Positions 27,616 to 62,955 of a stretch of 64,000 bases of DNA are shown here, one piece after another. The position numbers were made by a program, and so were the translations under genes. The stretch covers positions 248,001 to 312,000 of the forward strand of contig NW_026929305.1 in NCBI RefSeq assembly GCF_032062105.1, given 5' to 3'. Positions within the stretch are counted from its first letter, which is position 1. Each line of letters starts with the position of its first letter. The notes under the pieces were generated by a model. It did no database searches, was not told the origin of the DNA, and saw nothing but the letters and a program-made list of their open reading frames with translations. Source of the stretch: Saccostrea cucullata. Lineage: Eukaryota.

Positions 27616-30600
27616 TCAGAAAGAGACATAATCACTAAGGTAGGCTGGTCTGCTTCTCTTTCGTTTGCCATCTGCCTGAAAACTCTCCTTTTCATATGTT
27701 TCCTCAGCATCTTCAGCAATGTTTTCAGAGGAATCAGACATTGTATTTTCTGCAATGTTATTCGCTTGCAAAGGTTCTGATGTTAGGATTTGGTCTTTCA
27801 TTAGCCTTATCCTGTCAGTATGAATGACTTGGTTTGCACCTCTGTATCCACAGTTTACTTTATAAGTAACATTGGAACATTTCTCAATAATTTCAAATGG
27901 TCCTTGCCAATATGATGTAAATTTGGGAGATGTACCAGTCTTACGTTTTGGAAAGTAAACGTAAACTCTGTCACCTGGCTTAAATGACTGCCAGTTTAAT
28001 TTTCTATCATGATACCACTTCTGTCGTTCTATACTCTCTTTTGTCATTTCCTTGACAACTGCATGTGCTTCTTCTAATTTTTCTTGTAACTCCCAAACCC
28101 ATCTATTCTGTGGAATTCTCTTAATATCAGAATGGACCTCGTATACGATATCCAAAGGTGTAGCGACCTCTCTACCTAACATCATTTTGTTTGGAGTTGC
28201 ACCCGTTGATTCGTGGACTGCTGCTCTGTATGCCATCATTACGTATGGGAGATGCTCGTCCCAATCCGTATGGTGCTCATTGACATAGGCTGATAACATG
28301 GTAGCAAGAGTTTTGTTAAATCTTTCGACCATCCCGTTCGATTGGGGGTGGTACGGGGTGGTGTGTGTTTTCTTTATATTCAAAAGCCGGCACATTTCTG
28401 TAAAAAGATTGCTTTCAAACTGGACTCCTTGATCGGAGTGAATAGTTCCAGGCACTCCAAAGCGGGCTATGACTTCTTCCACTATCACCTTAGCTACAGT
28501 TGCGGCTTCCATATTAGCCATAGGAAAACTTTCTGTCCATTTAGTAAAGTAATCCGATACGACTAGTATATATCGGTTACCATTATTGGACATGGGAAGT
28601 TCGCCTAATATATCTGTAGCAATACGTTCCATTGGTGCGCCGCAAGTGACAACTTGCATCGGGGCACGTTTAGTAGTATTTGGTGATTTTCGCCTTTGGC
28701 ATTTTTCACAACCAGCAATGTACAATTTAACATCTTTCTGCAATCCTGGCCAATAGTATTTGCAGTTTATTTTCGCCAATGTTTTCTTTATCCCAAGATG
28801 TGCAGATGTCCTTTCATCATGGAACTGTCCTAACACTGTTCGTCTTTCACTGTATGGCACAACAGCTTGCAGAGAAACTTTGCCATTTTCGTGCTTTTTC
28901 TTTCGGAAGAGCATTCCATCCTCTAATACCAGAGCATCCCACTGAGAGCATAGAGACTTAATGAAGTTGCTTTGACCAGAAATCTCTGATGACTCCGGCT
29001 TAACACCTTTTTCAACCCATTTGATCAGTTGATTTATATCTCTGTCGTCGTTTTGTTTGGCTTTCAAAGACAAATTATCCTTAGGTGTTACACTACTTAT
29101 AGTATTAACTATACTTTCAGAAGATGTACAACATGCTTTTCTGCAAGGTAAACGGCTAAGGGCATCAGCATTTGCATGCTTATTCCCTGGTCTGTGTTCA
29201 ATGGTCATTTGAAAATTGCTCAGCGATTCAAACCATCGAGCAAGCTGGCCTTCTGGATTCTTGCTGTTCATTAGCCATTTCAAAGAACTGTGATCTGTTC
29301 TGACTAAAAACTGTTTGCCATACAAGTAGTGTTTGTAATACTTTGTAAAGTAGACAACAGCCAACAGCTCTTTCCTTGTGACGCAATATTTCCGTTCTGC
29401 TTTTGATAAGGTTCTGCTTCCAAAAGCAATTACTCTTTCTACTCCGTTTTGTGTCTGTGAAAGAACTGCCCCTATTGCTACGTCGCTAGCATCTGTATCC
29501 AAAATAAATGACTGTGTAAAGTCAGGATGGGCAAGAATTGGTGCGGAGATAAGTGCATGTCGAAGGGAGTCAAAGGATGCTTGACAATCATCTGTCCATT
29601 TGAAATTTGATCCCTTCTCAGTCAATTTGTTCAGTGGCTTTGCCTTTTCTGCGAAGTTGTGTATAAAACGTCTGTAGTAGCTGCAAAGACCTAAGAAGCT
29701 TTTCACCTCTGTCAGATTAGTAGGCACAGACAAATTTTGTACTGCAGAAATTTTTGAAGGATCTGTGCTTACTCCTTCCTCTGATACCACGTGTCCGAGA
29801 AATTCAACAGTCTTATGAAACAAGTGACACTTTCTTGCTTTCAGGTTCAGGTTAGCAGATGACAGTCTATCAAATACCTGTGTGAGGTTTTCTAACATGT
29901 TGGTAAACGATGTACCGATAACAATGATGTCATCTAGGTATACCAAACATATTTGCCATTGCAAGCCACTCAGAACAGTTTCCATTAGCCTTTCGAAGGT
30001 TGCCGGGGCATTGCAAAGGCCAAACGGCATAACATTAAAATGGTATAGACCACGTTTAGTTGCAAATGCCGTTTTTAGTTTATCTGAGTCATCCATGCTA
30101 ACTTGCCAATACCCGGAGCACAAATCAAGGGTTGAGAACCACTTTGCTCCGGCAAGACTGTCTAACGAGTCATCGATGCGTGGAAGTGGGTAGGCGTCTT
30201 TGACTGTAGCTGCATTTAAACGCCTGTAATCCACACAAAATCGCAAAGAACCATCTTTCTTTTTGGCTAAAACGACTCCCGATGCCCATGGACTATTCGA
30301 TTTCTCTATGATTTTCCTGTCAAGCATGTCGTCTAATTGCTTGTTCATCTCATCCTGTAAATGATGTGGAATTCTTCTAGGAGGTTCTTTCAGTGGGCGT
30401 GCGTCCTTGGTATCAATCGTGTGTTTAACCAGTGAAGTACGTCCCAAGTCTCTGTCTGACTTCGCAAATATATCTGCATACCTAGCCAAAAACTTTTGTA
30501 ATTGAGGTATTTCACCACCATTTAGATTAACTTTAGATCTCTCAAACAGATCCTGCAGATGGGACGGCAGATCCTTGCATGGCTTATTTACAGTAGAGGT

Positions 30601-32607
30601 TGGTTCAAAAACATTGTCAACTGAACTCATATTTGCAATAAATGTTTCTGGATACACTGTTTGATGTTCATGGGATGGATTCATCATTCGGACTGGTATT
30701 TCTCCATCTTTTACATATCCAACTGATCTTGCTATTAATGCCTTTCCTGATTTCAGGAACTTCTCCGATGGTTCTATCATACCTAAAACTTCTTTCATGT
30801 CGTAGGATTTTGACGGCATTGAGACCTTACAATAAGTCACTATCTCACTTCTGGCAGGAACAACAATCATCTCTTTGGAGTTAATTCTAAAGCAACCAAT
30901 TTTGCCACAGAAATCAACTTTGTAAACTTTGTCGTTTACCTTCAAATACCCATTAACTACGTCTATTGTACAATTGTATTTCTTCATAAAGTCAAGTCCA
31001 ATGACTCCATCAAGAGAAAAATCTGCTACGATGACATCTTGGCTATAAAAACTCTCACCCAGATTAATGCAAATGCTACTTTTTCCTTTCACAGTTAAGT
31101 CGGTCCCACATGCGGAAGAGACTATTTGATCGGTTTTGTACAAAACTGGTTTGTTTTGTATAGCCTCATAAACTTTACTTGACAGTACTGATAGTGTTGC
31201 TCCCGTGTCAACAAGCAAATTCGCTTCAATCCCCTGGATGGTAGCTTTCACGTACATTCCAGCTTCAGGGTCATTCTGGTTTACACCAACTTGAGCTTTG
31301 TAAGACTTGATGCATTTGAATGTGTTTTGTACAGGATGTTTCTTTGTACTATATGTGTATTTCTTTTGTGCTGGTGCGTTTTGTTGAGTTCTATAACCTT
31401 GTGGACAGTCATATCGGAAATGATTTGGAGATCCACACAAATAGCAGCGTCTGTTGCTGGTAGCTCCAAATTTCTTTTTGTATACAACATCCTGGGAATT
31501 CTTTGCTTTCATGTCATTAACTTCCTTACGAAGTTTTCTTATTTCATCCTTTAGCTCTACCAATATACTTGTGCTGATCTGATGTGATCTGTCTTTCTTG
31601 TTTCCCTCAGTTTTCTCTGACTGCATTGGTCGTAAGTGGGTTTGTTTTTCTATCATTTTACGATCAGATTTAACAAATGCTTCCAATTCGACAGCATGTC
31701 GAATAGCATCATTGAGATTTAATGGCCTTGCTTGTTTTATTCTCAATCTCATGTCAGCATCTAGGAGGGCATCAATAAACTGTTCTTTTGCCAGCGTTTC
31801 TTGTACATCTCTTGGCGCCGTTGGGTATGCCAAGCTTGTGAGTCTTCTTATGGATTGTCCCAGTTCTGGTAAAGTTTCCGTTGCTCGTTGTCGGCGTTCT
31901 CGCAGTTGGGTTCTATACAAGTCATTTTGATTCGAAGGTGCAAATCTCTCCTCTAATGCATTCACAAGTAAGACATAGTCATGCTTGTGTGTATTAGGCA
32001 AATTCCCCAGTACACCCTGAGCCTGTCCCCTCAAGGAAACTGCTAAATATAAACCTTTCTCTTGTTCCGTCCACTTGTTCAACATGGCGCATGCATCAAA
32101 ATGGGAACAATAATCTAACCAGGATCCAGTACCATCAAATGTTGCAGGTTTTATATGGGTCTGTGGTTTCTTCTCTGTTGCCGTTATGATATCGGTCTCT
32201 GTATCTTGTCTACTAAATCGACGATCCTTTCGGCGATTAGTAATGTTTGACTCTGTTGCACTTCCAGAGACTGGTGTTGACATTAAATAACCAGGTCTTT
32301 TGCCCTCATCGGAAGGAACACTACTTGTACCAAACAACATTTCATCTTCCCAAGAAACTTTTCCCATGGGATGCTTTTTCGGTTTAACATCACCGTGAAA
32401 GTCTATATCAGAAAATCTCCCTGATGCAAAACCTAAATCTTTTGATTTCGTATCTGATCGAACATCTGGGGTACTTGTTTTATTAGCACTTGTATCCTTG
32501 GCTAAACTAGCATTGTGAATGCTTAAACTGTCATTTTTCAACTCTTGTAGCTTCTGCTCTATGAACGTTATTTCTTTGTCAATGTCGGTAATGTCCTTGT
32601 CAGCCAT
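27616..32607 (-). CDS. Gypsy Gag-Pol polyprotein, 1663 aa, single ORF
   Basis: CCHC knuckle CYLCGSPNHFRYDC, protease LVDTGA, RT MPFGLCNAP and YLDD, RNase H DTDAS...ADALSR, integrase HHCC and SDQG...GMVER, GPF motif; order PR-RT-RH-IN; no chromodomain. Confidence 0.97.
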   Translation of the reverse strand: MADKDITDIDKEITFIEQKLQELKNDSLSIHNASLAKDTSANKTSTPDVRSDTKSKDLGFASGRFSDIDFHGDVKPKKHPMGKVSWEDEMLFGTSSVPSDEGKRPGYLMSTPVSGSATESNITNRRKDRRFSRQDTETDIITATEKKPQTHIKPATFDGTGSWLDYCSHFDACAMLNKWTEQEKGLYLAVSLRGQAQGVLGNLPNTHKHDYVLLVNALEERFAPSNQNDLYRTQLRERRQRATETLPELGQSIRRLTSLAYPTAPRDVQETLAKEQFIDALLDADMRLRIKQARPLNLNDAIRHAVELEAFVKSDRKMIEKQTHLRPMQSEKTEGNKKDRSHQISTSILVELKDEIRKLRKEVNDMKAKNSQDVVYKKKFGATSNRRCYLCGSPNHFRYDCPQGYRTQQNAPAQKKYTYSTKKHPVQNTFKCIKSYKAQVGVNQNDPEAGMYVKATIQGIEANLLVDTGATLSVLSSKVYEAIQNKPVLYKTDQIVSSACGTDLTVKGKSSICINLGESFYSQDVIVADFSLDGVIGLDFMKKYNCTIDVVNGYLKVNDKVYKVDFCGKIGCFRINSKEMIVVPARSEIVTYCKVSMPSKSYDMKEVLGMIEPSEKFLKSGKALIARSVGYVKDGEIPVRMMNPSHEHQTVYPETFIANMSSVDNVFEPTSTVNKPCKDLPSHLQDLFERSKVNLNGGEIPQLQKFLARYADIFAKSDRDLGRTSLVKHTIDTKDARPLKEPPRRIPHHLQDEMNKQLDDMLDRKIIEKSNSPWASGVVLAKKKDGSLRFCVDYRRLNAATVKDAYPLPRIDDSLDSLAGAKWFSTLDLCSGYWQVSMDDSDKLKTAFATKRGLYHFNVMPFGLCNAPATFERLMETVLSGLQWQICLVYLDDIIVIGTSFTNMLENLTQVFDRLSSANLNLKARKCHLFHKTVEFLGHVVSEEGVSTDPSKISAVQNLSVPTNLTEVKSFLGLCSYYRRFIHNFAEKAKPLNKLTEKGSNFKWTDDCQASFDSLRHALISAPILAHPDFTQSFILDTDASDVAIGAVLSQTQNGVERVIAFGSRTLSKAERKYCVTRKELLAVVYFTKYYKHYLYGKQFLVRTDHSSLKWLMNSKNPEGQLARWFESLSNFQMTIEHRPGNKHANADALSRLPCRKACCTSSESIVNTISSVTPKDNLSLKAKQNDDRDINQLIKWVEKGVKPESSEISGQSNFIKSLCSQWDALVLEDGMLFRKKKHENGKVSLQAVVPYSERRTVLGQFHDERTSAHLGIKKTLAKINCKYYWPGLQKDVKLYIAGCEKCQRRKSPNTTKRAPMQVVTCGAPMERIATDILGELPMSNNGNRYILVVSDYFTKWTESFPMANMEAATVAKVIVEEVIARFGVPGTIHSDQGVQFESNLFTEMCRLLNIKKTHTTPYHPQSNGMVERFNKTLATMLSAYVNEHHTDWDEHLPYVMMAYRAAVHESTGATPNKMMLGREVATPLDIVYEVHSDIKRIPQNRWVWELQEKLEEAHAVVKEMTKESIERQKWYHDRKLNWQSFKPGDRVYVYFPKRKTGTSPKFTSYWQGPFEIIEKCSNVTYKVNCGYRGANQVIHTDRIRLMKDQILTSEPLQANNIAENTMSDSSENIAEDAEETYEKESFQADGKRKRSRPAYLSDYVSF

Positions 32608-49872: not shown

Positions 49873-50884
49873 TGATTACTATTGCAATTTACTTGCCCTA
49901 AAAGGTCTAGTGATGCAAATGTCGTGGTTTTCGGGACCATATTCAAAACCCGATTATTTTGGGAACCCGGTTATAATTATATATTGGGAATTGTTTGTAA
50001 TGTAATTTATTTTGCTTGCATTTTATTGTAGTAAATCACAAATGAGTCCGACTGCGACTCGGACTAGCTGTGATAGTCCCCGTTATCTTTTGCTTTTTAC
50101 ATGACTTGAAGGTCTAGTGATGTAAATATCTTCATTTTCCGAACATTGTTCAAAAAGACATTATACTGGTATTGTTCTCTATTATACCATACCTCAATTG
50201 TATTTGTTCCAATGCTTTCGAGTCATTTGTATATATTGTAATGAAAGATACTGTTTTTTTTCTTCAATTTTAATGTATTGAGATGAAGTATTAGTGGATA
50301 ACATGTATATAATATTTTTCATAGACATTTTGTTGTAACAGTCACCGTGGAATCTAATTATGGCACCATTTAAGTCATGTGTAATAAAAATTTTAATTTA
50401 ATCTTAACATGTTAAAACCGTTTTAATACAAAGTATATTGTTCTTGAAATATTTCAAAAATTACACATGGCTTAAATATATGGCTGGCGTCCCCGTCGCG
50501 GTGCTGGGCGTCACACCTTCACACCAATTCCTTTAAACAGAAGAAAGTCTTTCATTTTAAATACTTCCAGCATCATTTGTATGCGCAAATCATTTTTTCC
50601 CTGGTTTAAAAGTGTGAATGTGTGATGGCAAATAGCCAATTTGTCCCGGTGGACTGGAAAAAAAAATTTGCACTATTTGTGAGAATACAACGCAAAAGGT
50701 ATTTTAATACGAAATACAGTCCTATTTTGTCAAAAGGTTATAATAGTTAACTTGTAAACCGAGGAGGGGGAATATAAATTAAGGGGGAAAAAACGAAGAA
50801 AAAAAAATTGGTATGTATGCGTATTAAAATACCTTAAGAATATATTTCTACGCAGTATTGTTAAAATAACTTCTTTTCCAGATA

Positions 50885-51316
50885 ATGGATTCAATCGATG
50901 GAACATTGCTGCAAGTGTTGGGGTTGAGTTTTAAGGTCCAACAAAGCAAATCGATGTCCAAAGAGCAAGTACAAATGTTCAACACTCTTACAAATAAACT
51001 AAGCGAAGAGGTTTCAAATATAAAGAAAGAGTTTGAAGCGATGGAAAAAAGAACAGTCGACTCCAAAAAGGAAGAAGCGACGTTAAAACGAAAATTTCAA
51101 GCATTAAAGAAGGAAGTCGAAGCACTCAAAATAAAAAATCAGAAATTAGAAAAAACGACGACGGAACTGAAGGCAAAATGTACAGATCTAGAAAAAGACC
51201 TTGATTCTAGCTGGGTTGAAGATATAGAACTGGATACAGGTGCCAATGAAGAAGGAAAGCAAAATGAAAAAGGAGAGGCGAGAAATGAGGAGAATACCGC
51301 AAAAACCAAAGAATAG
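50885..51316 (+). CDS. 143-aa coiled-coil protein with acidic tail, putative Helentron accessory gene
   Basis: Heptad K/E/L-rich sequence; acceptor-like cttttccag immediately before ataATG; AATAAA near 51628. Confidence 0.55.
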   Translation: MDSIDGTLLQVLGLSFKVQQSKSMSKEQVQMFNTLTNKLSEEVSNIKKEFEAMEKRTVDSKKEEATLKRKFQALKKEVEALKIKNQKLEKTTTELKAKCTDLEKDLDSSWVEDIELDTGANEEGKQNEKGEARNEENTAKTKE

Positions 51317-51843
51317 GAGAGAAAACTGAACACAGAGAAAAAACAGAGAAAAAACTTTAACGACTATAATAGAGCTTATTTGTTTTGCATTTGTGATTTT
51401 GTTTAACATCAATGCGTGAATATGTACTCATAGTTTTAAAGCAATTATGTTATAGTTGTGTATAGAGCAATTAATGTATGTTATGTACAAATACATATGT
51501 TAAAAAAATCCTTTTGTGTAATGCTTAATACATCACCCGAAGAGGTCAATTTTTTACTAGGTCTTATTAATAATTTTTCTTCATAAAAACTTTATTTTCT
51601 ATCGAACTTTTGTATAATAGAAAATACAATAAATGATTGTTTTATTGTATGTTGAAAGAGCTTTTCTAAAGTCCCTGGGTATCTCCTTAAATTGAAAGAT
51701 GTTAACTTTCATTAATCTTTATCAAGATTTCAGAAGAGCTCTTAAAGAGACACTTAATAACTGTAAAAGTGTCTCCAAAAAAATATAGATTTACAATAAA
51801 TATCTTTTTTCAGATGGACCCGTCTTAGTGTAAGGATTAACCA

Positions 51844-54800
51844 ATGTCCAAAAGGAAACGAACATTTAGTGGTCGAGAGAAAAAAGCCAAAGAAAGATAT
51901 AGGAAAAGGAGAAAACGGGAGGAAAAACCACGAACTCTTACGTATAGTCCAATTACTAAATCATGGGCTGCTCAAAAAAGAGAGGAACAAAAATTGACTT
52001 TACAAAATGATCATCATCTTTATGATAATACGTCTTCTACAAAGCTAGGACACCCCTCTAAGCTTCAACCAACTTCTCCGAATGGTAACTGTTTCTTCAA
52101 TGCACTATCATTTATCCTAACTGGAACAGAGAAGTTTCACAGCCAAATAAGGGCAAATGTGTGTGATTTTATTTCTACTCACTCTGCAGACTTGCAAGAA
52201 TTTTTACCAAACACCTGTCAAGGAGATGGAAAAAAATATTTAAATGATTCATCAATGAGAGTGATAGGTACTTGGGCGTCAGAGACAGAAATTTTTGCAG
52301 CTGCTTACATGTTAAATACAGAAATTTACGTCTATACCAAATATGGATGGCAATGGAAATGGTTACGACACAGCCCACCTGAACCTGCAAACACTTTGGG
52401 TATTTACTTGTATCATCATAATTTGAATCATTACGAAGTCGTTCTCGAAGTCGCTAAACAAAATTCAAAGAATCTGAAAAACCAAGAACGTTATTTTTCA
52501 AATAGGGAAAATGAAAGGAATCGCAAAAGAACAAAGTATGCTAGTGACTCTTCTGCGCGTGAAGCAAAGAAACTTAAAATGAAAGTTAAATACCATAGTG
52601 ATGTTAAAAGCAGAGAATATATCAGGAAGACAAACAATGAAAGACAAAAGAAGAAGTACAACTCTAACACTGCGTTTAGACGTAAACAAAAACAACGTGT
52701 GAAGCACCATTATGAAACATCAAGCACATATAGAAACCTTAAACTCATGTTATCACGAATGAGATACCTGTCAAACGCAGTGTTTAGGCAATCAATTCAA
52801 AAAATTGCAAGAAAACGGTACATTGAGGACTATACCTATCAGAACAAAATGAAAACTGCATCTAAAAAGAAGTACAAGACCAATACAGGCTTTCGCCAAA
52901 GTGTGAAAGAGTCATCCAAGAAGAAGTACAAGACCAATCCAGGCTTTCGTCAAAGTGTTAAACACTCGTCTAAGAAAAAGTACAAGACCAATCCAGACTT
53001 TCGTCAAAGTGTTAAACAGTCGTCTAAGAAGAAGTACAAGACCAATCCAGACTTTCGTCAAAGTGTTAAACAGTCGTCTAAGAAAAAGTACAAAGCCAAT
53101 CCAGACTTTCGTCAAAGTGTTAAAGAGTCGTCTAAAAATGTGAAAAACTATTCTAAACAAAAATACAATGAAGACAAAGACTTTAAGCAGCATGTGAAGT
53201 CATACTCCAAAATGAAATATAAAGTAAACGCAGATTTCAGACAATGTGTCAGAGCTTCGTCCTTGAAAAGATACGCATCAAGACCATTATTTCGATACAA
53301 GCTGAAGAAGTATCTCTCTCATCAATATCACAGCGATAGGAGTATAAAACGTAAGAAAAAAGAAACTGTCCGACTAAGAAGAAAATCCTTAGACAAAGCC
53401 TTGCAGACATTTCTGAGAAATATAGGAAAAACTCCGAAATACACCTGTACAGTATGTGCACGAATATTGTTTAAAGAACAAGTTAAGTTGTGCAATAAAT
53501 CTAAATATATAGAAAGCAAATATGCAGAAAATGCTAAGAAATGTTTGATAGGAAACTTTGTGTGCGACTCGAAAGAATGGATATGCATAACCTGTGACAA
53601 ACATTTGAGCTGTGGCAACATGCCCCCTCAAGCTCTTGCCAATGGATTGCATCTCAATCCAATGCCGGAGGAACTGAGTAGCCTGAACAGTCTAGAAAGG
53701 CAACTAGTCGCACTTCGTATTCCATTCATGAAAATTTTATCACTACCCCGTGGTGGACAACGGGGTGTGAAAGGCCAAGTTGTGAATGTACCTTCCAATA
53801 TTAACAGTGTAACGTCTTCACTCCCTAGAAGCATAGAAGGTGCCCAGATGATTAAAGTGAAACTGAAACGAAAACTATCATACAAAGGATATCAACAGTA
53901 TGAGTGGATACGTCCTACAAAAGTCATAGAGGCTGTCAAATACCTTGTGGAAAATAACTGTTGGTACTCTCAAATTACCTTAAACGACAATTGGTTTGAC
54001 ACAAACAATGATTCGGACTTAGTACGGGAGGAGAATATGCAAGAGAGCTCAGATGATGAAAACCCTCACGATACACAAAGTGCAGACTCAGAAAGTGCAG
54101 AAAGTGATTCACAAGATAAAGATGCACAAATTCATCCAATAGAAACGTGCTCAGAACCTCTTGATCTAGGACAGGAATTTCTTGACACAGATAACAAAAT
54201 TTTCTGTGTAGCACCTGGTGAAGGGCAAACGCCACAAAGTATTTTTCAAGAAAAGGGGGCAGAGGCAATGGCATTTCCAGCCCTTCTTCCAAATGGAAAA
54301 TACGGGTTTTCAGAAGAAAGAAAAATAAAACTTTCACCCTCAAAATACTTTAACTCACGCCTGTTTTGTGCTGACACACGTTTTGCAAAAGACAATAAAT
54401 TTATTTTCTTCGCACAGTTTATGATAGAGATGAGTAACATAAAATCAAACTTATCTATTGCTCTGCGAAAAGGAAAGGCAAAAACAGATGATGGGAAAAA
54501 AATAACAGCCTCAATGCTTACTAATTCAGAAAACTTACAACAGATATTAAAGACAGACGCTGGATTTCGCTTTCTACAACCCGTAAGAGGCTCGCCACCA
54601 TACTGGCAAAGGACCATGAAGGATCTATATGCAATGATTCGTCAACTAGGAATACCAACATGGTTTGTGACTTTCTCTGCAGGTGAAACGCGTTGGGAAG
54701 AGACAATTGATGCACTTAAGAACAAAAATGATATTCGACCTATACAAGATATTGAATGGACAGAGAAATGTCAACTTATTAGAGAAAATCCAGTTATGTG

Positions 54801-57800
54801 TGCAAGACTATTTAATCATCGGGTACAAAGACTTTTTACCGATCTCATCATGTCTCCTGCGCAACCAGTTGGAGAAGTCACTGACTTTTTCTATAGAACA
54901 GAGTTCCAACAGCGTGGTTCCCCACACATACACTGTTTGTTGTGGGTAAAGAACGCTCCAAGACTAGGCAAAAACACAGACAAAGAAATTTGCTCGTTTG
55001 TCGATAAATACATCACCTGTTCTCTGCCTGATCCTGAAAAAGATCCCGATCTTAATGACATTGTAAAAGCAGTTCAAATGCACAATAAATCACATACAAA
55101 GTCATGTAAGAAACATTCTACAACATGCAGATTCAACTTCCCAAGACCTCCCATTTTGGAGAGTTTTATCGCAAAAGTGCCTGACGACAAAGATACAACA
55201 AAATTTAAAGAGGGAGGATCAGATATGCCAACTATAGAGGAAATAAACAAAATGTGCAAAGCAGCAAATCAAAGATCACCAAAACAAATAGTAAAAGATG
55301 TATGGAGTATCATTAGCTCTACAGAGAATGTAGAAGAATCAACAATAGATAACATCCTACAGTCATGCAACGTCTCCTACTCAGCATTTGTAGACAGTTT
55401 GAAAACTATCACCAAAAGAAACTGCATATATCACAAAAGAGGTCTATCTGACACTTGGGTAAATAATTACAATCAAACCCTACTCAGAGCCTGGAACGCC
55501 AACATGGATATACAATATATTATGGACCCGTACTCATGCGTAGCTTACATTCTATCTTACATCAGCAAAGCAGAAGCAGAAATCGGAGAACTGCTAGCAG
55601 ATGCACAAAAAGAAGCTAGGGAGGGAAATAAAGACGCAGCTTCGGCAATGAAACAAATATCACACGTTTATATACAAAACAGAGAGGTGTCGGCCCAAGA
55701 AGCAGTATACAGAATTTGCAGTATGCATCTGAAAGAATGTTCAAGACAGGTTCTTTTTATCCCTACAGGAAATGATGCTTTTAGAATGAGTCTTCCTTTG
55801 AGTGCTCTTCATTCAAAAGAAGGAAGCAGCGAGGATATATGGATGCCATCTATCATGGATAAGTATTACTCTCGCCCTGATACAGAAGACTTTGATGACC
55901 AATGTCTAGCAGAGTTCTGTTCCAACTATTGCTTCTATCCAAAATCAAGACCTCCAAAGGCATCCAAAAAGAATAAAGACATTTCCTCAATTCATGAACT
56001 CCAGAAAGGATTAGGATATATTAAAAGAAGAATGGAGGGAAAAGAGGCTATTATTCGGTACCCAAGATTCAATCGTCTTAAAAATCCAAACGACTTCTAC
56101 TTGTCTCTGTTACAACTATACTTGCCTCACAGAAGACCAATAGACTTAGCGTCTAAAGACTTAGAAGAATATATTCAGCATGCAAAAGTTGGGGACAAAA
56201 ATGTATTAGATATTGTTAATCAAAACAGAGGTCTCTTCGAGAAAGATGTACAGGACCTGGAACGAGCTTGGGAAGATGTTCAAGAGGGCCGTATTGGAGA
56301 AGATGCCTGGTCAGCAGTTGCCCCAGAGTGTGAGGCAGAGAGACTGAACATTCAAGAGGAAAACAAGCAGCTTACTCAAGAAAAAGAGAACGAAGAAGAA
56401 ATTTCACCTGATATTGAACTTTTGGCATCTTCAGAAAAAGAGAAAAGTATGACTAAATGTGTTACACAATATCAGAGGCCAAAACTCTCCCAAAAAGAAA
56501 TCCAAGATTCGCTGAGAAACATGAACGAAAAGCAACAAAGAATATTCTATCAAGTTAGAGAATGGGTTCTAAAAGTTTCATGGAATCAGCATCCCGAGCC
56601 TCTACATGTATTTGTAACTGGAGGTGCTGGCACAGGAAAATCACATCTTATTAAATGTATTTACCATGAGACAAACAGAATTCTATCTAAAACAGTAGAA
56701 AACCCCGATTCAGCGACAACTCTTATAGCAGCTCCAACAGGTACAGCTGCTTTCAACATTGGGGGCATGACTCTCCATTCGGCATTTGGTATCAGCAAGA
56801 ACATTAAACTTCCTTATACACCTTTGGGAGAAAATATTTTAAACACATTAAGAGCAAAGTATGAAAATTTGAAACTCATCATTATTGATGAAATATCAAT
56901 GGTGGACCATAAACTTCTCACCTATGTCCACGGCAGATTAACTCAAATTAAGCAGTCAAAGAAAGTTTTTGGGAATGTTGCAGTATTGGCCTTTGGAGAT
57001 TTCTACCAACTGCCACCAGTGAAAGCATCACCACTCTATAAAGTTAAGGAGTCTGTTATGGTGGATCTTTGGAACCCCTTGTTCTCTAAAGCTACGTTGA
57101 CTGAGATTATGCGCCAGAAAGACGATGCTAAATTTGCAGAGATGTTGAATCGTTTACGAATTCGAGGTCGAGGAGAACCGTTACTTCAACAAGATATTGA
57201 AATGCTGCAATCTGTATCATGTGATTTGGCACCTAAGAATATGCAAGATGCTCTTCACATTTATTCTCTGAATAAAGATGTTGCAACGCATAATGAGGCT
57301 ATGGTCGATGCAATTTGTCATCCTTGTATTTTATCCACAGCAAAGGACTATACAAGGAGTAGTGTAACTGGAAACTTGGTCTTAAGGTACCAACCTTACA
57401 GCTCCTCATCACAAGAAGACCTCCCAGAAGTACTAAAATTAGGACTGAATGCAAGGGTGATGTTAACTCGAAATATCGACACCGAAGACGGTCTTGTGAA
57501 TGGCGCATTTGGAACTATTACTGCTATAGACCAACCTCAGGAAAATAATGTTAGAGCTGTTTACGTTAAATTTGACAACAACACAATAGGAAGAAAAGCA
57601 AAATCCAAAGCAGTCTCAGACATACCAGGATCAGAAGGTGCAGTCAGAATCACACTATTTGAAGATTCTCTTGCTGGTAAAAATGCAGTTAGAAGGCAAT
57701 TTCCTCTCAAGCTTGGCTGGGCTGCAACAATACACAAAGTACAAGGAATGACTTCCAATCGTGTAATTGTTTCACTTAACAGAGTATTTCAGCCTGGCAT

Positions 57801-58623
57801 GGCATATGTTGCACTAAGCAGAGCAACTGCCCTTGAAGGATTACGCATAATAAACTTTGATATGAATAGCATATTTGCCTCTGAAGATATCAAAAAAGCT
57901 TTGGAAAATATGCCAGACTTTCTCCCCCCGAACGATCCAAACATTGAAAGTAACTCGTTAAAGATAGCTTTACACAATACAGAAGGCCTTATTATCCACA
58001 AAAGGGACATTGAAAGCGCACAGATTCTTAATGATGCACACGTGATATGTTTCACCGAAACCTGGTTGAAAAAAGATGACTATATCCCAAAATCAATCTT
58101 ACCAAACTCGATGGTATATTCAATGCCTCGAAAAGAAGCCTACTCTTCTGCTGACCAGACATTTCGACAATTTGCGACAATGGAAAGAGGAGGTGTTGCA
58201 ATATTTACAAGAGACGTGGAAAGTACATTATACGATACCCGTACTGCAAATTTGGAGTGCGTAGCGGTAATGATAAAGAAACCAATCAGTGTAGCAGTGC
58301 TGGTTATCTACCGCCCTCCAATATACTCTTTAACCAAATTTAAAGAGCGCCTAGAGAGTCTTCTTCTCCGGATCGCTGCAGACATATCTTCACCAGTTAT
58401 CATTCTTGGGGATTTTAATGATAACGCGCTCAACACAGCACCGTGTTTGCAGGAAATATTTACCAAATATGGTTACCAACAGCTTGTAAAATCACCAACA
58501 ACAGAGTCTGGGACATGCCTCGATCTGGCTCTAGTAAAAGGTTTTGATGAGCTTCCAAGAGTGACTGTGAAACCCATTTATTATAGTTTTCACGATGTTA
58601 TCTACATTGAATGTAAAACATAA
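51844..58623 (+). CDS. Helentron Rep/helicase transposase, 2259 aa: OTU protease, basic repeats, Zn finger, HUH Rep, PIF1 helicase, AP endonuclease
   Basis: OTU GNCFFNALS/WA/NHY; CTVC...CITC; Rep FVTFS, YRTEFQQRGSPHIHCLLW (Helentron-type RGSPH), YILSYISK; helicase GGAGTGKS, DEISM, GDFYQLPPV, TIHKVQG, YVALSR; endonuclease HNTEGL, FTETW, IYRPP, GDFND, FHD; uninterrupted ORF. Confidence 0.96.
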   Translation: MSKRKRTFSGREKKAKERYRKRRKREEKPRTLTYSPITKSWAAQKREEQKLTLQNDHHLYDNTSSTKLGHPSKLQPTSPNGNCFFNALSFILTGTEKFHSQIRANVCDFISTHSADLQEFLPNTCQGDGKKYLNDSSMRVIGTWASETEIFAAAYMLNTEIYVYTKYGWQWKWLRHSPPEPANTLGIYLYHHNLNHYEVVLEVAKQNSKNLKNQERYFSNRENERNRKRTKYASDSSAREAKKLKMKVKYHSDVKSREYIRKTNNERQKKKYNSNTAFRRKQKQRVKHHYETSSTYRNLKLMLSRMRYLSNAVFRQSIQKIARKRYIEDYTYQNKMKTASKKKYKTNTGFRQSVKESSKKKYKTNPGFRQSVKHSSKKKYKTNPDFRQSVKQSSKKKYKTNPDFRQSVKQSSKKKYKANPDFRQSVKESSKNVKNYSKQKYNEDKDFKQHVKSYSKMKYKVNADFRQCVRASSLKRYASRPLFRYKLKKYLSHQYHSDRSIKRKKKETVRLRRKSLDKALQTFLRNIGKTPKYTCTVCARILFKEQVKLCNKSKYIESKYAENAKKCLIGNFVCDSKEWICITCDKHLSCGNMPPQALANGLHLNPMPEELSSLNSLERQLVALRIPFMKILSLPRGGQRGVKGQVVNVPSNINSVTSSLPRSIEGAQMIKVKLKRKLSYKGYQQYEWIRPTKVIEAVKYLVENNCWYSQITLNDNWFDTNNDSDLVREENMQESSDDENPHDTQSADSESAESDSQDKDAQIHPIETCSEPLDLGQEFLDTDNKIFCVAPGEGQTPQSIFQEKGAEAMAFPALLPNGKYGFSEERKIKLSPSKYFNSRLFCADTRFAKDNKFIFFAQFMIEMSNIKSNLSIALRKGKAKTDDGKKITASMLTNSENLQQILKTDAGFRFLQPVRGSPPYWQRTMKDLYAMIRQLGIPTWFVTFSAGETRWEETIDALKNKNDIRPIQDIEWTEKCQLIRENPVMCARLFNHRVQRLFTDLIMSPAQPVGEVTDFFYRTEFQQRGSPHIHCLLWVKNAPRLGKNTDKEICSFVDKYITCSLPDPEKDPDLNDIVKAVQMHNKSHTKSCKKHSTTCRFNFPRPPILESFIAKVPDDKDTTKFKEGGSDMPTIEEINKMCKAANQRSPKQIVKDVWSIISSTENVEESTIDNILQSCNVSYSAFVDSLKTITKRNCIYHKRGLSDTWVNNYNQTLLRAWNANMDIQYIMDPYSCVAYILSYISKAEAEIGELLADAQKEAREGNKDAASAMKQISHVYIQNREVSAQEAVYRICSMHLKECSRQVLFIPTGNDAFRMSLPLSALHSKEGSSEDIWMPSIMDKYYSRPDTEDFDDQCLAEFCSNYCFYPKSRPPKASKKNKDISSIHELQKGLGYIKRRMEGKEAIIRYPRFNRLKNPNDFYLSLLQLYLPHRRPIDLASKDLEEYIQHAKVGDKNVLDIVNQNRGLFEKDVQDLERAWEDVQEGRIGEDAWSAVAPECEAERLNIQEENKQLTQEKENEEEISPDIELLASSEKEKSMTKCVTQYQRPKLSQKEIQDSLRNMNEKQQRIFYQVREWVLKVSWNQHPEPLHVFVTGGAGTGKSHLIKCIYHETNRILSKTVENPDSATTLIAAPTGTAAFNIGGMTLHSAFGISKNIKLPYTPLGENILNTLRAKYENLKLIIIDEISMVDHKLLTYVHGRLTQIKQSKKVFGNVAVLAFGDFYQLPPVKASPLYKVKESVMVDLWNPLFSKATLTEIMRQKDDAKFAEMLNRLRIRGRGEPLLQQDIEMLQSVSCDLAPKNMQDALHIYSLNKDVATHNEAMVDAICHPCILSTAKDYTRSSVTGNLVLRYQPYSSSSQEDLPEVLKLGLNARVMLTRNIDTEDGLVNGAFGTITAIDQPQENNVRAVYVKFDNNTIGRKAKSKAVSDIPGSEGAVRITLFEDSLAGKNAVRRQFPLKLGWAATIHKVQGMTSNRVIVSLNRVFQPGMAYVALSRATALEGLRIINFDMNSIFASEDIKKALENMPDFLPPNDPNIESNSLKIALHNTEGLIIHKRDIESAQILNDAHVICFTETWLKKDDYIPKSILPNSMVYSMPRKEAYSSADQTFRQFATMERGGVAIFTRDVESTLYDTRTANLECVAVMIKKPISVAVLVIYRPPIYSLTKFKERLESLLLRIAADISSPVIILGDFNDNALNTAPCLQEIFTKYGYQQLVKSPTTESGTCLDLALVKGFDELPRVTVKPIYYSFHDVIYIECKT
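52861..53135 (+). repeat. In-frame 51-bp (17-aa) tandem repeat SKKKYKTNPDFRQSVKx, about 5 copies
   Basis: Visible in both the DNA and the translation. Confidence 0.9.
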
Positions 58624-58914
58624 TCACTTTGACTGAATATGCATTTGAGTGAACGATATAAATTAATGTACATTGTAAATTAAATCTAAAACAATTGTCC
58701 ATTGCAATGCTGTAAATATGTTGTTTTTTTTTCATTTTGATAAATTTAAGTCAAGTCGTAAAGATGATGTCTCTAATATTCTATTGTAAATCGATATAAA
58801 CATGCTATGTGTATAATTTATTCACAATCAATCCTATCATGTCCATTTAACCGAATGTTGAGAAAGACTAACATGTGTAGGTGTATATTTTAATGTACTT
58901 GTATATATTATTGT

Positions 58915-58934
58915 AAAAAAAAAAAGAAAAAAAG

Positions 58935-58977
<43 letters not shown>

Positions 58978-58980
58978 AAA
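58915..58980 (+). repeat. Genome-encoded 66-nt A tract with 3 G interruptions
   Basis: Seen directly, 292 nt after the Helentron stop codon. Confidence 0.97.
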
Positions 58981-59035
58981 CACTGTCGTCGTCTGCCAGG
59001 CGACCTGACGAGCCCTTACAGGGCGAAACAGTGTT
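58979..59035 (+). ncRNA. Type III hammerhead ribozyme; predicted cleavage after GUC at 58987
   Basis: Stem III aacactg/cagtgtt; GUC triplet; stem I gtcgtc(t)/(a)ggcgac; core CTGACGA (59005-59011); stem II gccc/gggc with loop ttaca; GAAA (59025-59028). All core consensus nucleotides are present. Confidence 0.92.
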
Positions 59036-59225
59036 CTTAGCATCTCCACTCTATCAAATATCTCCAACTCGATTTTGTCTTCAAATAAGAAAAAAGATTC
59101 AACCACACTTTGAATACTTTCTGAGGAAATAATTAAATTTTAGGTGCAAGCTACAAAAAAATTAATTAGGAAAATACATGGCTCTCATCCGGTACGCCGA
59201 GATGAGGGCTTTTTTTTTTATTTAT

Positions 59226-59640
59226 TATACCCCCGCTAGAAAAGTGCGAGGATATATAGAAATCGAAATGTCCATTCGTCTGTTACGCTTTCGGGTACCC
59301 ATCTCTTTTCTGCAACTCCTCTTTACAGTTACCACTGAATGGATATCTTAAACAAAAATGAGACTTTCACAAAATCTTTGTTATATAGTGTAATTGTGCA
59401 CCTCATATTTTACTTTTTGATCGGACACATATTTTGAATTTTCTACAGCAAAACATTGACACTGCCTTTTTCTATAACATGGATGGTTACTCATCTCTTA
59501 TCCGCAACTCCTCCTACACCACTGAATAAAATTTTATGATAATTTCACAGATTCTTTATTACATAATGCCGTTGTGCACCTCCTATTATACTTAATAATC
59601 CGACACTTATTTCGGGTCTTCAAGAGCAAAACAGGGACTT
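59226..59640 (+). mobile_element. HINE-like 5' fragment with two ~190-bp internal repeats
   Basis: ttatacccccgc...gcgaggatata head; catctctt..tc.gcaactcctc occurs twice. Confidence 0.45.
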
Positions 59641-59652
59641 TGTCATTAAAAA

Positions 59653-60135
59653 TGGCTCTCACACGGTACGCCGGAGTGGGGGCTTTTTTTATTTATTCGA
59701 AATAGCTCTCACCCGGTACGCCGGAGTGGGGGCTTTTTTTATTTATTCAAAATAGCTCTCACCCGGTACGCCGGAGTGGGGGCTTTTTTTATTTATTCAA
59801 AATAGCTCTCACCCGGTACGCCGGAGTGGGTTTTTTTTTTTTTTATTTATTCGAAATAGCTCTCACCCGGTACGCCGGAGTGGGGGCTTTTTTTATTTAT
59901 TCAAAATAGCTCTCACCCGGTACGCCGGAGTGGGGGCTTTTTTTTTTATCTATTCAAAATAGCTCTCACCCGGTACGCCGGAGTGGGGGCTTTTTTTATT
60001 TATTCAAAATAGCTCTCACCCGGTACGCCGGAGTGGGGGCCTTTTTTATTATTATCAAAATGATTCTCTACCGGTACGTCGGAGTGGGGGTCATTTTTAT
60101 TTATTTAAAATGGCTCTCATCTGGTACACTGGAGA
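59653..60135 (+). repeat. ~50-bp tandem array of GC hairpin + oligo-T units (8 near-identical, 2 degenerate; isolated variant at 59180-59220)
   Basis: Unit aatagctctcacccggtacgccggagtgggggc(t)natttattc. Confidence 0.95.
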
Positions 60136-62955
60136 TACACTGTACAATAGATGGAATGTCTTAAAATGCAAACATTCTTCATTGCCTTATCTAATAAACC
60201 GCACAAGAAATAGGACACCAAAATGGTCATGCATTGGGATATCCTACAAAATGATGTAGAAAAAAAATATCATGAAATCACGCGCATGCACGTGAGCTGC
60301 AATTTGATTGGCTGAAACTTTAAATTGCTATTTCTCCTTTGTTTTTTTGACGAAATTCTTTGAAATTTAAAATATAGTCATGCATTAGGATATCCTACAA
60401 AATGATATTAAAAAAATCATGAAATTACGCGCATGCACGTGTGCTGCAATCTGATTGGCTGAAACTTTAAATGGCTATAACTCCCTTGTTTTTCAACCAA
60501 ACAGGATGGGATTTAGAACATAGATAGATGTAAGGGACTCCTACAAAAAGGTATGATCATCATGCACGTGCACGCACGTGCGTGCATTTGAAACGAGTAT
60601 ATTTTAAAATACTCTTGAAAGACAAGATGATATGGTCATAACGCACATGCATTCACATGCGCTTGGGTGCAATGCTAAAAATTGAATATAATTAGTATCC
60701 TTCTAGAAAAACGTTGTTAAAGTCAAAAATGCACAGAGTTTGTCTTATTTAATGAAACTTACAGGGAATATGGCACCGAAAGGGAGTTGGGGAGCGTTTG
60801 GGGAACATCTGTAACGGTTCCCGTTACAATTAGCACTAGTTTCTTTTTTTTTTAAACAAAATTTAATACCTGTCCAGTAACAGAAGAATTATTATACTAG
60901 AATAAAGAAAACAACTTTCTAAAGGATTGTATACATACACATTAAATTAGCTTGAAATCGGTGTACTAGTATATTGGAAAGTGCAGGAATTATTTACCAT
61001 TGCAGGTTGAGAAGGGATGCCATATTTTAGGTTTGAAACCAGGCAAGTGAAAGCTGAATTCCAACCTACTTCAACATACTTGTACCCACTGTCTTCAAGA
61101 TATCAGTGTTTGAGACGTCAAAGTTCAAATATAATAGGAACATGTTTATCATATTATGTGATGGCATCCTCAAATCTTATGTTGTATAACAATATGTTTT
61201 AGAACTTATCAAGCTTTATTCTGTACCTTGCCAAAAAAAAAACTCAACTCAGCATAATTCTCATTAACTAATTATCATTGTTACTTGCGTATGTCAATGT
61301 AGGTCATTACTGGTACATGCCTGACCAACTAAAACTCTAAAATTGAAAAATCAGAGTCAAGATTTTCAGAGCAGCAGAAACAGTAGAATTTGTCATGTAA
61401 ATCTAATGATATGTACCGTAGCTGAGAATAAATGTACTCTAAATGTTGCATATATAAAAAAGAAAAAAGCAAAAAGTTCTCTTGTTTTCAGAATTTATAT
61501 TTACATGTGAAAAAAAGAAAAGGAGGTTGATATAGTTGGTGTGATGAGATGTTGGCAGGAACCTAGTAAAATAAAAGGAAGAACTTCCTTAAAATGATAC
61601 TTGTAGGGGAGAGTGTCTCATGGGGGGATTGTTTCAACTGACTTTACAGAATACAAAAGATCCATTGCATACCTAATTATCAATTATATGCCAAACACTA
61701 TGTTTAAAGTTTTCCATTGTTGGATATTTATGTTTAAATCCAAGATAACTTACCCAAGAGGATGTGATTTTTTTTTAACCAATGTAATTTTTCTCAAGTT
61801 TAAAGCAGTGTTTCATAAGTTTTAATGAAAAAATCAGAAGGGGGAGGGGGTAAATTTTTGACTTCATTCAAAGTATCTGTGGTTTGCAGTTGCCCATGAA
61901 TTTAATAAATAATTATACAAAGCAACAAGTTGAAATGAGTAAAATATTATGAATGTCCTGCATGTTTTAGTTTCATTTCAGAATTTTTCAAGTTTGACCA
62001 AATCTTGAAAAAGTAAAAGCCACAAGGTTTTGCAATTATTTGACATAGCATTACAAAATGCAATATAATTTTGCAACATCATAAAGATGCAAATTTAAGA
62101 TGCCAAAAAATTTAGTTCACATTTACATTTAACTCATTACACATGTTTTATAAAAGAGTAAATAAGTGTAGTTTGGGAATATTGTTATGTTAAACGCAGC
62201 CATTTTGGTTAAAAATCTGGTATTCCTGTCTCCATGGTAAAAAATTTTGCATTCCTGTTTCCATAGTAATAAAGAATGGATAGGGAAAATTTTATTTCAT
62301 ATTAGTTTCAATCTAAGGAGATAGTTTCAGGAAACTTGAAACATGCCCTGGTTAGTCTACATGTACTTCAAAATTGTCAATTTTACGGAAAGGGGGGGGG
62401 GCATTTTGTGCAGGTGTTCACAGTTCTCCTATCTAAGAACATATTTACATGTATTAATGCTCTTGGAAATGGGATGTGAATATTTTTACATGACACTTCA
62501 CCTAGATATGGACTAATTTTACTGTAAATGACATCAAAACAGGTAGAAAGGAACATTTCTTTTCTATATGAACTTAATTAAATGTGCATATGTTCCTTGA
62601 AATACGGAAATTTTGCAGATTTTGGGTAATTTTTCATTAGCTTTTTTAAAAAAAAATTTTTAAGTGTCCCATAAATATTTTAATGTGTTTAAACTAACTT
62701 ATGTACCATCTATACAATGCACTGTTTCCTGAATTTCTAATCAGTGTGCAAAGTATTAAAAAATCGCTTAGAAAAAGGGTCTAAAATGGCAATTTTCTCA
62801 ATTTGGCAAAAATCCAAAATCCCCAAAGCTAAGCGTTGTTAAGCCATTATGTAGAATAACAGTTTTTAAAAAATTATGTTGTTATACTAGAGAGGAATAA
62901 TGGTAGTTTTGAAACAAAAGTAGATTTTCCCATTCTCTTGTTTCTTTTAAGCTCA

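What the first reader, a model, noticed from the sequence alone, without database searches (positions are those of the whole stretch)
58915..59035. Templated poly(A) fused to a type III hammerhead ribozyme at the 3' end of a Helentron transposase gene
Seen: 292 nt after the Rep/helicase stop, on the sense strand, a 66-nt A tract runs directly into aacactGTC-gtcgtct-gcc-aggcgac-CTGACGA-gccc-ttaca-gggc-GAAA-cagtgtt. Known: this is the complete hammerhead core (CUGANGA, GAAA, NUH triplet, G10.1-C11.1) in type III topology. Loop 1 can begin with U and loop 2 ends in A, the pair typical of fast natural hammerheads. No AATAAA lies between the stop and the tract, only a distant ATTAAA at about 58679. 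Inference: self-cleavage after C58987 would give an mRNA ending in an encoded A66 tail plus CACUGUC with a cyclic phosphate. That would be 3'-end formation independent of host cleavage/polyadenylation, or a way to cut read-through transcripts from circular or tandem rolling-circle intermediates. Animal hammerheads are mostly type I motifs of Penelope-like elements and retrozymes; I do not know of one described as part of a rolling-circle DNA transposon.
Basis: partly seen in the sequence, partly recalled or inferred. Interest (0 to 1): 0.95.

Follow-up and report, generated by a model that had tools for sequence, protein, structure and literature searches.

The report
Ribozyme-bracketed transposase gene in oyster Helentron
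A rolling-circle DNA transposon of rock oysters keeps a DNA-encoded run of A's fused to a self-cutting hammerhead RNA after its transposase gene, and a second, different self-cutting RNA in front of it, which suggests that it cuts out and tails its own messenger RNA, something I found described only for retroelements and for engineered reporter genes.

Summary
Confirmed and extended. A complete type III hammerhead (58979-59035; Rfam E 1e-8, below the gathering score) follows a 66-nt A tract, 292 nt after an intact Helentron RepHel ORF in Saccostrea cucullata. It is part of the element: it occurs in 19 of 19 copies of two families (60% amino-acid identity) and in S. echinata, 1.1-1.9 kb inside the right terminus. 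Between families it is 90-93% identical, while four-fold sites are 28-40%. Duplicates further downstream have decayed; the copy next to the A tract has not. New: the same elements carry an HDV-like ribozyme upstream of their ORFs (50362-50639, covarying stems), and two other Helentron clades here carry a different hammerhead or a 3' HDV-like ribozyme. Relatives from mussel, scallop, abalone, amphioxus and fish showed none. Best reading (0.55): self-cleavage makes the transposase mRNA's 3' end, and the tract serves as an encoded poly(A) tail, like the engineered A95-C7-HhR reporter. Cleavage is not shown and the RNA reads (about 1x) are inconclusive. I found no paper on ribozymes in Helitrons, and no earlier scan note of this on other DNA.

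The parts
58915..58980 (+). A tract, 63 A + 3 G; proposed DNA-encoded poly(A) tail
   Evidence: longest pure A run 8-42 nt in other copies, longer in copies with an intact ORF; 0 of 40 other Helentron UTRs have such a tract
58979..59035 (+). Type III hammerhead ribozyme, predicted cut after C58987; the 5' product ends in the A tract plus 7 nt with a 2',3'-cyclic phosphate
51844..58623 (+). RepHel transposase ORF, 2259 aa: OTU, DUF6570, HUH Rep, Pif1 helicase, AP-type endonuclease (Helentron/HLE2)
50362..50639 (+). HDV-like ribozyme with long J1/2 and P4 inserts; predicted cut before G50362, catalytic C at 50629
   Evidence: 0 descriptor hits in 40 shuffles of the window
50885..51316 (+). Accessory ORF, 143 aa coiled coil, 38% identical to the matching ORF in S. 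echinata
50870..50881 (+). Splice-acceptor-like pyrimidine run + CAG just before the accessory ORF; also present in S. echinata
   Evidence: sequence
51804..51813 (+). Splice-acceptor-like pyrimidine run + CAG 30 nt before the RepHel ATG; also present in S. echinata
   Evidence: sequence
59180..59219 (+). First UNCG-capped hairpin + T run downstream of the hammerhead; a related hairpin sits at the same place in family 2 and S. echinata
59645..60134 (+). Array of 9.6 copies of the same hairpin + T run (50-bp unit)
60796..60841 (+). HLE2 right terminus: subterminal inverted repeat, hairpin, CTAG, then TT; reached through about 570 bp of a non-autonomous partner
   Evidence: same terminus at stop+1456 to +1562 in family 2 and S. 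echinata, and about stop+1500 in L002
48903..49857 (+). 59-bp tandem array upstream of the HDV-like ribozyme; related array at the same place in family 2 and S. echinata

Best explanation
This Helentron lineage defines its own transposase RNA with ribozymes. Step 1 (shown): the A tract and hammerhead lie inside the element, 330-380 nt after the RepHel stop, in both families and both species, and are under purifying selection. Step 2 (inferred from a complete core, about 0.9): the hammerhead cuts the nascent transcript in cis after C58987. Step 3 (inferred, about 0.6): the upstream product, ending in about 20-66 A's plus 7 mixed bases and a cyclic phosphate, is the working mRNA. The tract binds poly(A)-binding protein and stands in for a tail; the 7 non-A bases may slow deadenylation, as C7 does in the engineered A95-C7-HhR reporter. 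The cut also separates the mRNA from 1.1-1.9 kb of hairpin repeats and from read-through into host DNA or round the circular intermediate. Step 4 (structure shown, role inferred): HDV-like ribozymes upstream of the ORFs cut on the 5' side. Because each ORF has a conserved splice-acceptor-like site after the ribozyme, these probably lie in introns or free the unit from upstream co-transcripts.
For: Cassette in 19 of 19 copies with a RepHel C-terminus and in S. echinata. Hammerhead 90-93% identical between families against 28-40% at four-fold sites and about 60% in the UTR. 97.9% of stem cells stay paired, with one two-sided change and seven one-sided ones. Duplicates about 345 nt downstream have decayed (24 and 49 bits against 86-88), the one at the tract has not. 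Pure A runs are longer in intact-ORF copies (median 29 against 10, p 0.004). No such tract in 40 other Helentron UTRs. No conserved AATAAA before the cut. Reads pass the only ATTAAA (depth 4 and 9 at 58719) and none lie at 59048-59195. Upstream HDV-like motif with covarying P1, P2, P4 and J1/2 helix. An engineered tract + C7 + hammerhead end gives a translated, deadenylation-resistant mRNA in fly cells (PMC4888236).
Against: No cleavage assay. RNA depth was about 1x, the tool skips the A tract, and the region after the ribozyme is under 80% identical between copies, so the gap in reads proves nothing. The tract is short or interrupted in many copies and is only A9 plus TAA repeats in the one S. 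echinata copy. About 22 further copies of this hammerhead, the clade B hammerhead and the clade C HDV have no A tract. The tract-length link may only reflect copy age. Most Helentrons tested have no ribozyme, so it is dispensable for this class of element.
Confidence: 0.55

Rival explanations
1. The ribozyme is an insulator or brake, not a maker of mRNA ends. It cuts read-through or surplus transcripts, or removes a downstream polyadenylation signal and so lowers transposase output, as in mammalian Clec2. The A tract is a linked microsatellite or only softens the decay.
For: Two other Helentron clades have a 3' ribozyme without a tract; in clade C it lies 15-100 nt before the point where copies diverge. 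Clec2 precedent (PMC6765202). Helitrons form circles (PMC4778049). Tract is degenerate in S. echinata.
Against: The tract abuts stem III in both families despite saturated neutral sites; only the tract-adjacent hammerhead escaped decay; intact copies have the purest tracts.
Confidence: 0.25
2. The two ribozymes excise a unit RNA with a 5'-OH (HDV) and a 2',3'-cyclic phosphate (hammerhead) that a host tRNA-type ligase joins into a circular mRNA (8626 nt in the window, 7516 nt in S. echinata) with an internal A tract.
For: The two ends are chemically the ligase's substrates (PMC6765202); both ribozymes are conserved in both families.
Against: No junction read could be sought: the reads were laid only on 55200-59630. 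Splice-acceptor-like sites before each ORF and 30 ATGs between G50362 and the RepHel start fit a spliced, capped mRNA better. The two ends show no obvious pairing.
Confidence: 0.1
3. The cassette is a passenger: a piece captured from a retroelement, or the fossil tail of a retrocopied Helentron mRNA, carried along without function or recently swapped between families.
For: Helitrons capture DNA. The genome is rich in ribozyme-bearing retroelements, and a twister piece after one Helentron (L042) belongs to an independent repeat. About 22 tract-less copies of the same hammerhead lie in an unidentified repeat that could be the donor.
Against: An island of 90-93% identity in saturated surroundings, structure-keeping changes, decayed duplicates as internal control, same position in two species, no target-site duplication.
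Confidence: 0.07
4. The A-ended RNA is a template for retro-mobilisation by LINE or Penelope enzymes.
For: An RNA with a terminal A tract resembles a LINE template (own knowledge).
Against: No copy ends at the tract or the cut site; all 19 run on past the ribozyme, and most that could be followed reach the DNA terminus.
Confidence: 0.03

Closest known systems
Helentron / HLE2 rolling-circle transposons (PMC11417382; oyster HINEs PMC7492417)
   Same: RepHel with OTU, DUF6570, Rep, Pif1 and endonuclease; right end with subterminal inverted repeat, hairpin and TT.
   Different: No ribozyme is mentioned in the HELIANO paper (0 occurrences) and none was found in five literature searches that paired Helitron or Helentron with ribozyme terms.
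Engineered A95-C7-HhR reporter 3' end (PMC4888236); yeast synthetic A tail + ribozyme (Dower 2004, title only, via PMC3241649)
   Same: Encoded A tract, 7 non-A bases, then a hammerhead cut: the same layout.
   Different: Those are laboratory constructs; this one is natural, selected and in a transposon. Function here is untested.
Clec2 3' UTR hammerhead of mammals (PMC6155905, PMC6765202)
   Same: Type III hammerhead in the 3' UTR of an animal protein-coding RNA.
   Different: Clec2 is discontinuous, in a host gene, has no A tract and lowers expression by cutting off the polyadenylation signal.
Penelope-like elements and retrozymes (PMC6155905; 10.64898/2026.07.22.740005)
   Same: Hammerheads inside mobile elements.
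   Different: Those are retroelements; animal ones use type I motifs in terminal or tandem repeats, and type III goes with plant LTR retrozymes. Here: DNA transposon, one intact internal type III motif, no reverse transcriptase.
HDV-like ribozymes of R2, L1Tc, RTE and the CPEB3 intron (PMC6765202)
   Same: Nested double pseudoknot upstream of an ORF, freeing the RNA from a co-transcript or lying in an intron.
   Different: Here in a DNA transposon, one before each ORF in family 2, with 110-140-nt J1/2 and 80-100-nt P4 inserts and a 6-bp P1, and paired with a 3' hammerhead.

Membership tests
Type III hammerhead ribozyme | Core CUGANGA, GAAA and NUH triplet | tested here: met
   CUGACGA, GAAA, GUC
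Type III hammerhead ribozyme | Three stems, stem III open, stems I and II closed by loops | tested here: met
Type III hammerhead ribozyme | Rfam RF00008 gathering score (48.5 bits) | tested here: not met
   45.2 bits, E 1.2e-8, full length; best copy 47.3. A curated cut-off for a plant-centred model, not a structural failure.
Type III hammerhead ribozyme | Loop 1 / loop 2 tertiary contact | tested here: inconclusive
   Loop 1 starts with U, loop 2 ends in A, both invariant in 14 sequences; contact itself not testable
Type III hammerhead ribozyme | Self-cleavage | not testable with these tools
   needs an in vitro assay
Helentron (HLE2) | HUH Rep + Pif1 helicase in one ORF | tested here: met
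   PF14214, PF05970; HUH motif at aa 1020, two-tyrosine motif at 1235, Walker A at 1593
Helentron (HLE2) | AP-type endonuclease and DUF6570 marker | tested here: met
   PF03372 E 3e-10, PF20209 E 2e-23; marker status from PMC11417382
Helentron (HLE2) | Right end: subterminal inverted repeat, hairpin, TT | tested here: met
   60796-60841; flanks diverge right after it in 9 family 2 copies and S. echinata
Helentron (HLE2) | Left end with matching inverted repeat | tested here: inconclusive
   Matches at 42948 and 43003, but 43001-44128 is a whole non-autonomous unit and 47950-48920 has no other copy
HDV-like ribozyme (50362-50639) | P1, P2, P3, P4, P1.1 in nested double-pseudoknot order, L3 consensus, catalytic C in J4/2 | tested here: met
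   descriptor hit in window and twice in S. echinata, covariation, 0 in 40 shuffles
HDV-like ribozyme (50362-50639) | 7-bp P1 starting with G.U or G-C | tested here: inconclusive
   6 bp with G1.U (G1-C in one copy), or 7 bp starting U.G
HDV-like ribozyme (50362-50639) | Rfam match; self-cleavage | tested here: inconclusive
   No Rfam hit for the window at gathering level or for L071 at E 2, as expected with long inserts; cleavage not testable
Retrozyme / Penelope-like element | Tandem or terminal ribozyme repeats around a non-coding or RT-coding unit | tested here: not met
   single intact internal motif after a RepHel ORF, no RT

The most novel reading that the evidence does not exclude
A DNA transposon whose transposase message is cut out at both ends by its own ribozymes (HDV-like 5', hammerhead 3'), carries a DNA-encoded poly(A) and needs no host cleavage and polyadenylation; in the extreme form the two ends are ligated into a 7.5-8.6 kb circular mRNA. 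Ribozymes would have been recruited at least three times in the Helentrons of one oyster genus.
Probability: 0.3. Interest if true: 0.93.

Novelty: new variant of a known kind. Interest (0 to 1): 0.82.

Why it matters
Self-cleaving ribozymes in animal genomes are described from retroelements and a few host genes. A selected hammerhead and HDV-like pair inside a DNA transposon widens that picture, and an encoded A tract plus ribozyme would be a natural third way to make an mRNA 3' end, matching a construct that laboratories built by design. How Helitron transposase RNA is ended, and how read-through on circles or into host DNA is handled, is hardly studied; here the cut sites are predicted to the base and can be tested at once.

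Tried and rejected
Rfam at gathering level finds nothing in the window. Ribozymes in relatives: none by Rfam or descriptor in two Mytilus copies (53% identity), Argopecten, Haliotis, Branchiostoma, Chanodichthys, Crassostrea angulata and two ENA contigs; only 2-8 kb of flank and one or two copies each, so absence is not proven. The C. angulata protein turned out not to be in the HDV clade; the Logan contigs of P0413 end 0.7 kb after the stop, too short; the sea-urchin look-up failed. The twister after L042 was rejected as a Helentron part: its matches cover only the ribozyme piece, on contigs outside the RepHel list. No target-site duplication around the cassette. RNA reads inconclusive; one Logan contig is a frameshifted copy that lacks 58766-59211. 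The tree is the quick version; the link between clades A and B is unsupported (54). Dower 2004 could not be read. The element's left end was not established. No structure or complex prediction was run.

Full report
Observation. The sequence is as described. A 66-nt tract (63 A, 3 G; 58915-58980) starts 292 nt after the stop of a 2259-codon ORF and runs into a hammerhead. Rfam Hammerhead_3 matches all 54 positions at 45.2 bits, E 1.2e-8, under the gathering score of 48.5. The minimum-energy fold is the hammerhead (z -3.4), also in a 540-nt context. The predicted cut after C58987 leaves the tract plus 7 bases on the upstream RNA.

Host and element. The ORF has OTU, DUF6570, HUH Rep, Pif1 helicase and endonuclease domains, the make-up of a Helentron/HLE2 (PMC11417382). 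The right terminus (subterminal repeat, hairpin, CTAG, TT) is at 60796-60841; family 2 copies end with the same motif 1.5 kb after the stop and their flanks diverge there. The cassette is therefore internal, 1.1-1.9 kb from the DNA end. The left end was not established.

The cassette belongs to the element and is selected. All 19 copies with a RepHel C-terminus in this clade carry it: 3 of the window's family and 16 of a second family at 60% amino-acid identity. One broken copy has a core mutation and one lost a stem base. S. echinata has it at the same distance, with a degenerate tract. Between families the hammerhead is 90-93% identical, four-fold sites 28-40%, and the UTR about 60%, near alignment noise. 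In 14 distinct sequences 97.9% of stem cells pair; one pair changes on both sides and eight on one side. The sequences are related, so this is support, not proof. Family 2 and S. echinata have a duplicate hammerhead about 345 nt downstream that has decayed (24 and 49 bits against 86-88). Copies with an open frame over 2100 codons have longer pure A runs (median 29 against 10, p 0.004), which may reflect age but shows what the spreading copies carry. None of 40 other Helentron UTRs has such a tract, and no target-site duplication flanks the cassette.

A second ribozyme upstream. A 60-nt island at 50462-50522 is about 90% identical in family 2, where it occurs twice per element about 1.4 kb apart, and in S. 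echinata. It is the core of an HDV-like ribozyme. A descriptor finds it at 50362-50639, twice in S. echinata, and otherwise only the Rfam-confirmed HDV motifs below; 40 shuffles of the window give none. The outer P1 pair is G.U or G-C; one P2 pair is G.U, A-U or G-C; one P4 pair is U-A, C-G or U.G; a 13-18-bp helix closing J1/2 swaps U-A for C-G; the inserts are otherwise unalike. In S. echinata the order is HDV, coiled-coil ORF, HDV, RepHel, A tract, hammerhead; the window has only the first HDV. Each ORF is preceded by a pyrimidine run and CAG in both families, and 30 ATGs lie between G50362 and the RepHel start, so splicing from an upstream exon is likely and these ribozymes may be intronic (inference).

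Other clades. Among 40 more distant copies (35-40% identity), one clade has a different type III hammerhead with a long stem I about 150 nt after the stop (three contigs; a fourth copy has it deleted). Another has an HDV-like ribozyme above the Rfam cut-off (44-57 bits): 13 of 33 genomic matches lie downstream of and on the same strand as a listed RepHel ORF, 12 of them within 0.85-3.7 kb, and copies diverge 15-100 nt after it. Its first P1 pair is C-G, which from my own knowledge is a weak cleaver. Neither clade has an A tract. The remaining clades and nine relatives from other animals showed no ribozyme. About 22 more copies of the window's hammerhead, without tract, sit in a low-copy repeat that I could not identify.

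RNA. Three oligo-dT libraries give about 1x depth along the ORF, with some depth in every bin up to 58751 in at least one run and none from 58752 to 59195. Reads pass the only ATTAAA. The tool skips the A tract and the downstream part is poorly conserved, so this fits the model but does not test it.

Mechanism. Shown: anatomy, linkage, selection. Inferred: cleavage in cis (about 0.9), and use of the tract as a tail on the working mRNA (about 0.6), together 0.55. The layout equals the A95-C7-HhR reporter, which is translated and resists deadenylation in fly cells (PMC4888236). Rivals: insulator or Clec2-like brake (0.25; PMC6765202), ligation of the 5'-OH and cyclic-phosphate ends into a circular mRNA (0.10), passenger (0.07), retro-template (0.03). 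The first two are not exclusive of the best reading.

Comparison and novelty. It is a member of HLE2 (left end untested) and has every testable feature of a type III hammerhead except the Rfam cut-off. It is not a retrozyme or Penelope element. Reviews place animal hammerheads in type I satellite or Penelope settings, with Clec2 as the type III exception (PMC6155905). Five searches pairing Helitron or Helentron with ribozyme terms found no report of the association; the library lacks most subscription papers and Repbase notes, so this is not proof. The parts are known and the combination appears new: a new variant of a known kind, interest 0.82.

Noticed in passing
window 50362-50639; L071 862-1145 and 2359-2636: HDV-like ribozyme with long inserts upstream of the ORFs; two per element in family 2, one in the window's family. 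Not listed among earlier notes.
   Followed up: yes
L032, L044, L052, L054, L060 (and 8 more contigs by coordinates): A separate Helentron clade ends in an HDV-like ribozyme 0.85-3.7 kb after the stop, with a C-G first pair, just before copies diverge.
   Followed up: partly
L038 stop+147..260, L050: Third clade with a different type III hammerhead whose stem I carries a 60-nt hairpin extension; no A tract.
   Followed up: partly
L023-L030 and about 14 more contigs: Same hammerhead without A tract at the end of a roughly 370-nt module in an unidentified low-copy repeat, often next to minisatellites; possible donor or derivative.
   Followed up: partly
window 59180-59219 and 59645-60134; L008, L071, L021: Hairpins capped by UNCG-type loops with G.U pairs and followed by T runs, repeated downstream of the hammerhead in both families with different stem sequences.
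   Followed up: partly
window 48903-49857; L071 619-803: 59-bp tandem array upstream of the HDV-like motif, with a related array in family 2 and S. echinata.
   Followed up: partly
window 48439-48510 and 48583-48665: Two tRNA-like stretches with A- and B-box-like motifs; not called by ARAGORN, no other copy found in the genome. An amphioxus Helentron also has a tRNA-like match 2.5 kb upstream of its ORF (L078 2466-2537), perhaps a SINE.
   Followed up: partly
L042 1642-1696 (-): Twister-P1 ribozyme after A10, 594 nt past a RepHel stop; a 120-nt piece of an independent repeat.
   Followed up: yes
L071 1-600: GC-richer upstream segment shared by family 2 and by one copy of the window's family (C15623) but missing from the window copy, whose 5' region seems rearranged.
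   Followed up: no
window 27616-32607 (-): Gypsy-type LTR retrotransposon with an unbroken 1663-aa gag-pol ORF.
   Followed up: no
window 42946-44128 and 60220-60841: Non-autonomous HINE-type elements share the right terminus of the autonomous families; the window copy reaches its terminus through about 570 bp of such a partner.
   Followed up: partly
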